Shown one piece after another: positions 3,660-4,582 of a stretch of DNA of 6,526 bases. The notes below the pieces were generated by a model. It saw nothing but the letters and a program-made list of their open reading frames with translations, did not search any database and was not told the origin of the DNA. Each line of letters starts with the position of its first letter. Positions within the stretch are counted from its first letter, which is position 1. The translations under genes were made by a program, and so were the position numbers. Origin of the DNA: Octopus sinensis (lineage: Eukaryota); assembly GCF_006345805.1 (NCBI RefSeq), contig NW_021829353.1:1-6526 (forward strand), given 5' to 3'.

Positions 3660-3687
3660 AATAATTGATAATATTTTACTTTCAAAT

Positions 3688-3902
3688 AAGGCGGTGAGTT
3701 GGCAGAATAGTTACCGCCCCGGTCAAAATGTTTAGCGGCATTTCGACCGTCTTTACGCTCTGATTTCAAGTTACGCCGGGGTCGACTTTGCCTTTCTTCA
3801 TTTCAGGATCGATAAAATAAGACCCTGTAGTGCACTGCGGTTGATGTAATCGACTTATCTGCTCTCCTGAGCTTGCTTCGTTCTGTCAAATTTGAAACCA
3901 AA
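3688..3902 (+). mobile_element. Family-1 tRNA-derived SINE, old diverged full-length copy (unit A)
   Basis: Ungapped alignment to the copy at 3980-4142 with about 37 mismatches in about 163 nt (~77%, hand count). Ends TTTGAAACCAAA. Confidence 0.85.
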
Positions 3903-3917
3903 ATTTTACTTTCAAAT

Positions 3918-3978
3918 GGGGCGACAAGCGAGCAAAATTATTATCACGCCGGCCAAAATACTTAGCGGTATTTCGTCC
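3918..3978 (+). mobile_element. Family-1 SINE head of old copy B, interrupted at GGTATTTCGTCC
   Basis: GGGGCGACAAGCGAGCAAAATTATTATCACGCCGGCCAAAATACTTAGCGGTATTTCGTCC aligns with the heads of units A and C. Confidence 0.75.
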
Positions 3979-4204
3979 AGCGAGCTGGCAGAAACGTTAG
4001 CACGCCGGGCGAAATGCTTAGCGGTATTTCGTCTGCCGTTACGTTCTGAGTTCAAATTCCGCCGAGGTCGACTTTGCTTTTCATCCTTTCGGGGTCGATT
4101 AAATGAGTACCAGTTACGCACTGGGGTCGATATAATTGACTTAATACGTTTGTCTGTTCTTGTTTGTCCCCTCTGTGTTAGCCCCTTGGGGTAGTAAAGA
4201 AATA
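3979..4204 (+). mobile_element. Family-1 SINE, younger long-tail copy (unit C)
   Basis: Clear A box (TGGCAGAAACG) and B box (GAGTTCAAATTCC), body with GTCGAC/GGGGTCGAT motifs, tail ending GTAGTAAAGAAATA. Confidence 0.9.
3986..4060 (+). promoter_or_regulatory. Pol III internal promoter (A box 3986-3996, B box 4048-4060) of SINE unit C
   Basis: Match to TRGCNNARYNG and GWTCRANNC-type consensus. Confidence 0.65.
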
Positions 4205-4389
4205 GGTATTTGTCTGCCGTCGTTCGAGTTCAAAGTGCAAATTCCGCCGAGGTCGACTTTGCCTTTCATCCTTTCGAGGTCGATTAAATAAGTACTAGTT
4301 ATGCATGGGTACGATATAATCGACTTAATCCGTTGTCTGTCCTTGTTTGTCGTCTCTGTGTTTAGCTCCTTGTGGGTAGTAAAGAAATA
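4205..4389 (+). mobile_element. Family-1 SINE, headless long-tail copy (unit D), tandem to 4023-4204
   Basis: Aligns end to end with 4023-4204, with several small indels including a GTGCAAA insertion. Starts exactly at the GGTATTT(C)GTC motif. Confidence 0.88.
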
Positions 4390-4556
4390 GGTGTTTCGTC
4401 CGACTTTACATTCTAGGTTCAATTTCCGTAGAGGTTGACTTGACTTTTCATTCTTTCGGGGGTCGATTATATAAGTGTCAGCTGAATACTGTAATCAACT
4501 GAGCCTCCCCACCAACCCCTGAAATTGCTGGCCTTGTGCTAAAACTTGGAAACAAT
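4390..4556 (+). mobile_element. Family-1 SINE body and short tail, the probable continuation of old copy B
   Basis: Resumes at GGTGTTTCGTCC, the motif at which the B head stops. Ends GAAATTGCTGGCCTTGTGCTAAAACTTGGAAACAAT. Confidence 0.8.
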
Positions 4557-4582
4557 ATTTTACTTTCAAATACAATGTCTTT
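4410..4582 (+). repeat. Right arm of the long inverted repeat
   Basis: See 3504-3659. The arms share diagnostic variants (TTCCGTAGAGGTTGACTTGACTTTT, loss of GGGGTCGAT before GTAATC) and the non-SINE flank ACAATGTCTTT. Confidence 0.92.

What the first reader, a model, noticed from the sequence alone, without database searches (positions are those of the whole stretch)
3670..4572. SINE copies arrayed between invariant 15-bp linkers: a repeat-spacer-like architecture suggesting repeated site-specific insertion
Seen: the order is linker - SINE A - linker - SINE B (with nested C and D) - linker, where the linker ATTTTACTTTCAAAT is identical in all three copies and in a fourth inverted copy. The units between linkers are heavily diverged (A vs C ~77% by hand count), and A and B have different tails, so they are not a recent tandem duplicate. 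Inference: the linker behaves like a 15-bp target-site duplication regenerated by successive insertions at one site (reconstructed empty site ...GATAAT-ATTTTACTTTCAAAT-ACAATGTCTTT...). Ancient TSDs should have decayed with their SINEs. At ~12% per-copy divergence, 45 unchanged positions has a rough probability of 0.88^45, about 0.003, although CpG-free AT-rich DNA mutates more slowly. This leaves three options: the linker is constrained or homogenised, old SINE copies were captured recently into a fixed site, or a sequence-specific retroposition pathway keeps re-targeting this motif.
Basis: partly seen in the sequence, partly recalled or inferred. Interest (0 to 1): 0.75.

Follow-up and report, generated by a model that had tools for sequence, protein, structure and literature searches.

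The report
Two octopus SINEs sharing one insertion site
Two short mobile elements (SINEs) landed one after the other in exactly the same staggered cut in octopus DNA, so the 15-base duplicated target now sits before, between and after them; this is a known way for mobile elements to form tandem pairs and not a new kind of system.

Summary
ATTTTACTTTCAAAT occurs exactly at 3673, 3903 and 4557 (+) and at 3515 (-).

The units need re-parsing:
- There are two full-length SINEs between the linkers, A (3688-3902) and M2.
- M2 is split into B' (3918-3978) and D (4390-4556) by nested units B and C, which are flanked by their own 12-bp direct repeat.
- The fourth, inverted linker is not independent. 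It lies inside a 164-bp inverted copy (E) of D's 3' part plus linker plus 11-14 bp of unique flank.

Comparison with SINE copies from 14 kb of Octopus bimaculoides shows where the element ends. The family's 3' end lies just before the linker and its 5' end just after it. None of the eight copies there carries the motif.

That same 14 kb holds an independent example of the architecture: an 18-bp target duplication, a SINE, the duplication, a 5'-truncated SINE, and the duplication again.

Best reading: the linker is a target-site duplication shared by two successive insertions, a "double insertion" dimer. Constraint on the linker, or a pathway aimed at this motif, is not needed. Interest is low to moderate.

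The parts
3073..3500 (-). Second SINE family (S2), full length. Its head AGGCGTAGGAGTGG lies at 3500 and it has an internal (CA)n/(TA)n run. It abuts the outer end of block E.
   Evidence: BLAST to three or more copies in L007. Head and tail ends were defined against the L007 copies.
3501..3664 (-). Block E, an inverted secondary copy of the 3' part of D, plus the linker (3515-3529) and 11-14 bp of D's unique right flank (3501-3514). It lacks 17 nt (CAAC...CAAC) that D and the family have.
   Evidence: Inverted repeats I2 and I21. Pairwise alignment at 93.3% identity.
3665..3672 (+). Remnant of the original left flank (..TTGATAAT) of the insertion site.
   Evidence: It is not homologous to any SINE copy.
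3673..3687 (+). Linker L1, the 5' copy of the target-site duplication.
   Evidence: Exact match. It abuts the 5' end of SINE A.
3688..3902 (+). SINE A, full length, with an X-type tail ending ...GAAACCAAA.
   Evidence: Family alignment. Flanked by perfect 15-bp direct repeats.
3903..3917 (+). Linker L2, the middle copy of the duplication, shared by A and M2.
3918..3978 (+). B', the 5' part of SINE M2 (head), ending in GGTATTTCGTCC.
   Evidence: Alignment to SINE heads (D17, 31, 34).
3979..4204 (+). SINE B (Y-type tail ...GTAAAGAAATA), nested inside M2.
   Evidence: It is 94.8% identical to L007 13029-13162.
4205..4389 (+). Unit C, either a copy of the 3' 183 bp of B (90.5% identity) or a second 5'-truncated insertion at the same 12-bp site.
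   Evidence: (spacing 185).
4390..4556 (+). D, the 3' part of SINE M2. It starts with GGTGTTTCGTCC (a direct repeat of 3967-3978) and its X-type tail ends ...GGAAACAAT.
4557..4571 (+). Linker L3, the 3' copy of the target-site duplication.
4572..4760 (+). Unique right flank of the insertion site (ACAATGTCTTTGAG...).
   Evidence: No significant similarity to any SINE copy on either strand.

Best explanation
The linker is a 15-bp target-site duplication (TSD) shared by two successive insertions.

Proposed sequence of events:
1. The ancestral site read ...TTGATAAT | ATTTTACTTTCAAAT | ACAATGTCTTTGAG...
2. A SINE inserted there by LINE-mediated, target-primed reverse transcription, with nicks staggered by 15 bp. 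This duplicated the 15-mer.
3. A second SINE of the same tail type later used the same two nick positions in one of the two copies. The result is linker-A-linker-M2-linker.
4. M2 was then interrupted by SINE B. B is flanked by a 12-bp direct repeat of M2 sequence, GGTATTTCGTCC / GGTGTTTCGTCC.
5. C arose either by unequal exchange between that motif inside B and its copy after B, or as a further insertion at that site.
6. A local event then copied the 3' part of D, with its linker and 11-14 bp of flank, in inverted orientation next to L1 (block E). This produced the fourth linker.

Shown here: the coordinates, the element boundaries, the co-linearity of E and D through the linker, the absence of the motif at other copies, and a second array of the same build elsewhere.

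Inferred: the order of the events; reuse of the site because insertion preserves and regenerates the target; and the mechanism that made E.
For: 1. The 15-mers abut exact element ends. Heads in O. bimaculoides start AAGGCGG directly after their own duplications (L007 13578: TACAAGTCG on both sides). Family tails of all three types end at ...GAAA(N)AAT, which is where the linker starts.
2. L1 is preceded by non-SINE sequence and L3 is followed by non-SINE sequence.
3. A and M2 are clearly different copies, 71.7% identical with several indels. A simple recent duplicate is therefore excluded.
4. Other family copies have duplications of 9 to about 20 bp with unrelated sequences. None of eight copies in L007 has the linker within two mismatches.
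5. There is an independent example in L007. ATTATCATAATATATAGT (1105-1122) is followed by a full-length SINE, then ATTATTATAATATGTAAT (1340-1357), then a 5'-truncated SINE, then ATTATTATAATATGTAAT (1502-1519). Different truncation marks separate insertions.
6. E lacks 17 nt that D and the family share, so E derives from D and is not a separate insertion at a like site.
7. The mechanism is documented for other elements: tandem dimers with one duplication at the junction, from double insertion (PMC5932611), and single-nucleotide hotspots for SINE-into-SINE insertion (PMC2836564).
Against: - If the roughly 25-30% difference between A, M2 and other family members were all decay since insertion, three intact 15-mers would be improbable, about 0.001-0.003. 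A's B-box-like motif looks degenerate, which hints that A is old.
- I could not build subfamily consensus sequences, so the insertion ages are unknown.
- No empty or single-insertion orthologous site could be examined.
- All three X-type tails in the window are followed by the linker. A subfamily-specific 3' extension would also give that pattern.
Confidence: 0.65

Rival explanations
1. The linker, perhaps with ACAATGTCTTT, is a 3' extension belonging to an X-type SINE subfamily. For example, a source copy could be transcribed through its own flank. A, D and E would then each carry it as part of the element.
For: All three X-type tails in the window are followed by the linker. E and D share it plus 11-14 more bases. 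A's tail is homologous to the D/E tail right up to the linker.
Against: L1 has no SINE tail in front of it. The only X-type tail found outside the window, L007 19954-20062 (-), continues ...AAAACTAATGTTATTAGATG, without the linker. Y- and Z-type tails are homologous to the X tail and end where the linker begins. A's last 40 tail bases are only about 65-70% like D's, yet the next 15 are 100% identical. E has no direct repeat of its own and lies 740 bp from D, so it is better explained as a local copy.
Confidence: 0.12
2. A DNA-level tandem duplication. One SINE with its duplication (L-X-L) was doubled by unequal exchange between its two flanking copies. The two SINE units then diverged, possibly helped by ectopic conversion from other family members, while the unique linkers stayed unchanged.
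For: The locus shows other local DNA-level events: B/C at 185-bp spacing and the inverted copy E. Polarised by hand, E and D differ at about 3 of 78 A/T sites and about 6 of 56 G/C sites, so A/T sites change about three times more slowly.
Against: A and M2 differ at 28% of aligned sites and by many indels, while 45 linker bases have no change. In the L007 array the second unit is 5'-truncated, which unequal exchange between flanking repeats does not produce.
Confidence: 0.12
3. The 15-mer is a functional or specifically recognised sequence. Either a site-specific retroposition system aims at it, or it is kept unchanged by selection or by gene conversion.
For: Four identical copies within 1.1 kb. 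Both shared duplications seen here start with ATT and end with AAT.
Against: There is no association with other copies: 0 of 8 in L007, and none at the SINE fragments at 1741-1925 in the window. The other duplications are unrelated in sequence. There is no significant hairpin (z from +0.7 to -1.0). Fifteen bases flanked by diverged sequence make a poor substrate for gene conversion (general knowledge, not tested here).
Confidence: 0.05
4. An assembly artefact that joins SINE-containing reads at a shared short sequence.
For: The locus is repeat-rich and the origin of the window is unknown.
Against: The shared stretch is only 15-18 bases, shorter than usual assembly word sizes. The junctions fall exactly at biological element ends. 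The same build occurs in an independent chromosome-level assembly.
Confidence: 0.03

Closest known systems
Tandem transposable-element dimers formed by double insertion at one target site (McGurk and Barbash 2018, PMC5932611; the R1 array with 33-nt rDNA duplications between units; P-element, hobo and jockey dimers)
   Same: Head-to-tail elements in one orientation. Exactly one copy of the target duplication sits at the junction and it is identical to the outer copies. The units can be told apart as separate insertions. The logic is that an insertion preserves its target and makes a second copy of it.
   Different: Here the elements are non-autonomous SINEs in an octopus. The two units are strongly diverged from each other. 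The array has since been modified by a nested insertion, a tandem copy and an inverted copy.
Single-nucleotide hotspots for SINE-into-SINE insertion (Alu into Alu; Levy et al. 2010, PMC2836564)
   Same: Repeated use of one precise nick position by the LINE machinery, mostly in sense orientation.
   Different: The Alu hotspot lies inside the Alu consensus. Here the reused site is unique flanking DNA that was duplicated by the first insertion.
Insertion signature of RTE-related SINEs (Nishiyama and Ohshima 2018, PMC6007223)
   Same: The start of the target duplication matches the microsatellite-like 3' end of the SINE. Here some tails end ...AAT(ATT)n and both shared duplications start with ATT.
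   Different: The partner LINE of this octopus SINE was not identified here. The thymine-stretch signature described in that paper was not seen at this site.
Site-specific non-LTR retrotransposons (R1, R2 and similar)
   Same: Repeated insertion with identical duplications at one sequence.
   Different: Those elements use the same target at nearly all copies. Here the other copies have unrelated targets.

Membership tests
SINE (short retroposon mobilised by a LINE) | Short (100-500 bp), dispersed and multi-copy | tested here: met
   Units are about 215-235 bp. There are 7 copies or fragments in the window and 8 in 14 kb of O. bimaculoides L007.
SINE (short retroposon mobilised by a LINE) | Flanked by target-site duplications whose sequence differs from copy to copy; frequent 5' truncation | tested here: met
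   TACAAGTCG flanks L007 13578. An 18-20-bp repeat flanks L007 1125 and 1358. A 15-mer flanks the units here. 5'-truncated copies occur at L007 1358, 1891 and 19954.
SINE (short retroposon mobilised by a LINE) | Head derived from a tRNA or other small RNA, with internal polymerase III A and B boxes | tested here: inconclusive
   ARAGORN finds no tRNA. Rfam gives no tRNA match even at E-values up to 10. A B-box-like GGTTCAA(A/T)TTCC is visible by eye only.
SINE (short retroposon mobilised by a LINE) | 3' tail shared with a partner LINE | not testable with these tools
   No octopus LINE sequences were available. RTE LINEs are reported to be active in octopus (PMC9115989).
Tandem element dimer by double insertion | Same orientation, with one duplication-length copy of the target at the junction, identical to the outer copies | tested here: met
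   L1, L2 and L3 are identical 15-mers at the exact element ends.
Tandem element dimer by double insertion | The two units are separate insertions (different sequence or truncation) | tested here: met
   A vs M2 is 71.7% identical with indels. In the L007 array the second unit is 5'-truncated.
Tandem element dimer by double insertion | An empty or single-insertion allele or orthologue carrying one copy of the target | not testable with these tools
   No cephalopod genome could be searched by DNA.
Site-specific retroposition aimed at the 15-mer | The same target sequence at most copies of the family | tested here: not met
   There is no match within two mismatches in L007, which has 8 family copies. 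The window fragments at 1741-1925 have none nearby. The sample is small.
Linker as part of a SINE subfamily tail | The motif follows the same tail at unrelated loci | tested here: inconclusive
   The single external X-type tail (L007 19954-20062) lacks it. This is one copy only, and the source species of the window is unknown.

The most novel reading that the evidence does not exclude
Site reuse may be systematic in octopus. One unselected 14-kb sample of O. bimaculoides already holds a second SINE pair that shares its duplication. My rough estimate of the expectation under random insertion is about 6e-4. The SINE/LINE machinery may therefore re-nick its own regenerated target very often. Both shared duplications start with ATT and end with AAT, which could mean a nick after AAT on both strands, but that rests on two cases. 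If so, octopus SINEs would be an abundant natural source of head-to-tail arrays that can seed tandem repeats.
Probability: 0.3. Interest if true: 0.5.

Novelty: new member of a known kind. Interest (0 to 1): 0.25.

Why it matters
This is a clean worked example, apparently undescribed for cephalopod SINEs, of how retroposition alone builds head-to-tail arrays separated by an invariant short sequence. It shows that such 'repeat-spacer' pictures in repeat-rich animal genomes need no exotic mechanism. If site reuse proves frequent genome-wide, it would bear on the nick-site preference of the octopus LINE machinery. It would also bear on how SINE-derived tandem repeats begin in a genome known for large SINE expansions.

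Tried and rejected
**Attempts to fetch more cephalopod DNA**
- Translated SINE reading frames found no homologue with the first query.
- A concatenated query found only one O. bimaculoides protein, which gave locus L007.
- Searching with that protein found only itself.
- Window reading frames are not on record as genes.
- DNA pattern scans of viral, metagenome and prokaryote genome collections gave only chance bacterial or archaeal hits.
- No paper in the library contains the sequences.

**Ideas tested and dropped**
- The linker and the SINE tail form a conserved hairpin. Folding energies are no better than shuffles, with z from +0.7 to -1.0.
- The target site is itself an inverted old SINE tail. 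Local alignments of the right flank to seven SINE copies, on both strands, are not above shuffled controls.
- The linker flanks a DNA transposon or MITE. The inverted repeat consists of SINE sequence, and I found no matching duplication outside it.
- Twin priming as the origin of E. E and D cover the same part of the element rather than adjoining parts.

**Other limits**
- Rfam matches in the window are microsatellite noise, all below the gathering thresholds.
- A crude family consensus from 13 copies was too mixed across subfamilies to date individual copies.

Full report
**1. What is in the sequence**

ATTTTACTTTCAAAT occurs without mismatch at 3673-3687, 3903-3917 and 4557-4571 on the + strand and at 3515-3529 on the - strand. 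None of 200 dinucleotide-preserving shuffles gave as many near-matches. The window is octopod DNA. It is full of microsatellites and two families of short interspersed repeats. The only database protein that matches translated repeat sequence is an Octopus bimaculoides protein whose C-terminus derives from the second repeat family. Through it I obtained L007, which is 24.7 kb of an O. bimaculoides chromosome with 14.2 kb of real bases.

**2. Re-parsing the units**

A family alignment of the window units with eight L007 copies shows three tail types, which I call X, Y and Z. They are homologous to one another (...GGCCTTGTG..(A)AAGTAGAAA(A)GAAT). All of them end at the AAT that lies just before the linker in the window.

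- Full-length heads start AAGGCGG. In L007 such a head directly follows its own target duplication: TACAAGTCG lies on both sides of the copy at 13578.
- In the window, L1 is followed at once by AAGGCGGTGAG (unit A, 3688-3902) and L2 by GGGGCGACAAG.
- The stretch after L2 is one SINE, M2, in two pieces. B' (3918-3978) is a head that ends in GGTATTTCGTCC. D (4390-4556) starts with GGTGTTTCGTCC and carries the rest of the body and an X-type tail.
- Between these pieces lie B (3979-4204, Y-type tail) and C (4205-4389), which is 90.5% identical to the 3' 183 bp of B.
- B is therefore a nested insertion with a 12-bp direct repeat. C is either a tandem copy made by exchange between that motif inside B and its copy after B, or a further insertion at that site.

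The true order is L1 - A - L2 - M2 (with B and C nested) - L3.

**3. The fourth, inverted linker**

The region 3501-3664 is an inverted copy (E) of 4411-4585, at 93-95% identity. The homology runs from the SINE body through the tail and the linker and 11-14 bases into D's unique right flank (ACAATGTCTTT). It stops where the head of a family-2 SINE (3073-3500, - strand) begins.

E lacks 17 nt, bounded by CAAC on each side, that D and the rest of the family possess, so E derives from D. E has no direct repeat of its own and lies 740 bp from D. It is best read as a local secondary copy. Whether it arose at the DNA level or through an RNA chimera with the neighbouring SINE is unresolved. The fourth linker is therefore not independent evidence.

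**4. Part of the element, or part of the target?**

For the target:
- L1 is preceded by non-SINE sequence and L3 is followed by non-SINE sequence.
- The element ends defined from other copies coincide with the linker boundaries.
- None of the eight L007 copies has the motif within two mismatches. This includes the one X-type tail, L007 19954-20062, which continues ...AAAACTAATGTTATTAGATG.
- A's last 40 tail bases are only about 65-70% like D's, while the next 15 are identical.

For the element:
- All three X-type tails in the window are followed by the linker.
- However, two of them (A and M2) are the elements at this site and the third (E) is a copy of D.

I rate a subfamily tail extension at about 0.12.

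**5. An independent second example**

L007 holds the same build:
- 1105-1122, ATTATCATAATATATAGT
- 1125-1339, a full-length SINE
- 1340-1357, ATTATTATAATATGTAAT
- 1358-1501, a 5'-truncated SINE
- 1502-1519, ATTATTATAATATGTAAT, followed by unique DNA

The two copies that flank the downstream, truncated element are identical (18 of 18). The upstream copy differs at 3 positions. The two SINE units are 84.6% identical. Different truncation marks separate insertions, the same argument used for non-LTR dimers in Drosophila (PMC5932611). The pattern also suggests that the downstream element came later.

L007 was reached through a protein, not chosen for this feature. By my rough estimate, with about 0.7 family copies per kb, the same orientation required, the same first nick, and the same duplication length out of about ten, random insertion would give about 6e-4 such arrays in L007. 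This is inference, not a tool result.

**6. Mechanism**

The best explanation is double insertion. Target-primed reverse transcription with nicks staggered by 15 bp duplicates the target. Both copies keep most of the nick-site context, so a later insertion can use the same two positions. That leaves one duplication before, between and after the two elements.

This is documented for R1, P, hobo, jockey and bacterial elements (PMC5932611). Single-nucleotide hotspots for SINE-into-SINE insertion are known in humans (PMC2836564). For RTE-related SINEs, the start of the duplication correlates with the microsatellite-like 3' end of the RNA (PMC6007223). RTE LINEs are active in octopus (PMC9115989).

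Here some family tails end ...AAT(ATT)n. Both shared duplications start with ATT and end with AAT. That is compatible with priming by microhomology, but it rests on two cases and the partner LINE is unidentified.

**7. The decay puzzle**

Units can differ because their source copies differed. The L007 array shows identical duplications around units that differ by 15%.

Two local clocks are available:
- E and D differ at 9 of 134 aligned sites, and all 9 are transitions. Polarising these by hand against the family gives about 3 changes at 78 A/T sites and about 6 at 56 G/C sites.
- B and C differ at 17 of 179 sites.

At the E-D rate, the chance that three copies of a 15-mer with 13 A/T bases all stay intact is about 0.34. 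The zero changes in 45 bases give an upper bound of about 6% per-lineage divergence since insertion (my calculation). If A and M2 really were as old as their mutual divergence suggests, the chance would fall to about 0.001. Since I could not date them, a residual puzzle remains. This is the main reason my confidence is 0.65 and not higher.

**8. Rejected ideas**

These were a hairpin between tail and linker, a target made of an old inverted SINE tail, a DNA transposon with inverted ends, twin priming, and an assembly artefact.

**9. Verdict**

The core inference, a target duplication regenerated by successive insertions, is supported. The more exotic options are not needed. This is a new example of a known kind of event. 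The one open and mildly interesting question is how frequent such site reuse is in octopus genomes.

Noticed in passing
L007 1105-1519 (O. bimaculoides CM046623.1): A second SINE pair that shares its target duplication: an 18-mer, a full-length SINE, the 18-mer, a 5'-truncated SINE, and the 18-mer again. The two downstream 18-mers are identical and the upstream one differs at 3 positions.
   Followed up: yes
window 3967-4401: GGTATTTCGTCC / GGTATTT-GTCT / GGTGTTTCGTCC lie before B, between B and C, and after C. This may be a third, nested case of the same linker-unit-linker-unit-linker build, or a tandem copy made by exchange at that motif.
   Followed up: partly
window 3064-3073 and 3667-3679: GATCTTTTAC, beside the tail of the family-2 SINE, resembles GATAATATTTTAC, beside the inner end of block E. 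This could be a weak direct repeat around the combined E plus family-2 block, which would mean a third hit overlapping the same site. The match is poor (9 of 10 with a 3-nt indel).
   Followed up: partly
window 1741-1925: Two more family-1 SINE fragments are joined head to tail (...GTAAAGAAATA | AGAAACGTTAGCAC...). In all four Y-type tails seen (B, C, this one, and L007 12990-13175 minus strand) the tail is followed at once by another 5'-truncated SINE.
   Followed up: partly
window 3188-3550 (-) and protein P0001: The C-terminal 50 or so residues of O. bimaculoides LOC106871914 are translated family-2 SINE sequence, in the same frame as this window's reading frame. This looks like an exonised or mis-annotated SINE.
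   Followed up: partly
window 2419-2810: A trinucleotide array of about 400 bp that shifts in blocks through (GTA)n, (GAT)n, (AAT)n, (AAC)n and (AAT)n. It gives long low-complexity reading frames on both strands.
   Followed up: no
window 5230-5350 and 5450-5650: A (CTGT)n-type array and a (GATA/CAGA)n-type array form a long imperfect inverted repeat (114 nt, 71% complementary, about 185 nt apart).
   Followed up: no
window 300-870, 1520-1625 and 5140-5210: Rfam microRNA-family matches (mir-297, mir-3149, mir-1277 and others) all fall on (TA)n, (ATGT)n or (CA)n microsatellites. All are far below the gathering scores and are not genes.
   Followed up: yes
L008 (Natrialba taiwanensis) 3318-3339: The 22-base SINE core TTCAAATTCCGCCGAGGTCGAC has one exact match in an archaeal genome. 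I took it as a chance hit, or possibly a tRNA-like stretch, and did not examine it.
   Followed up: no
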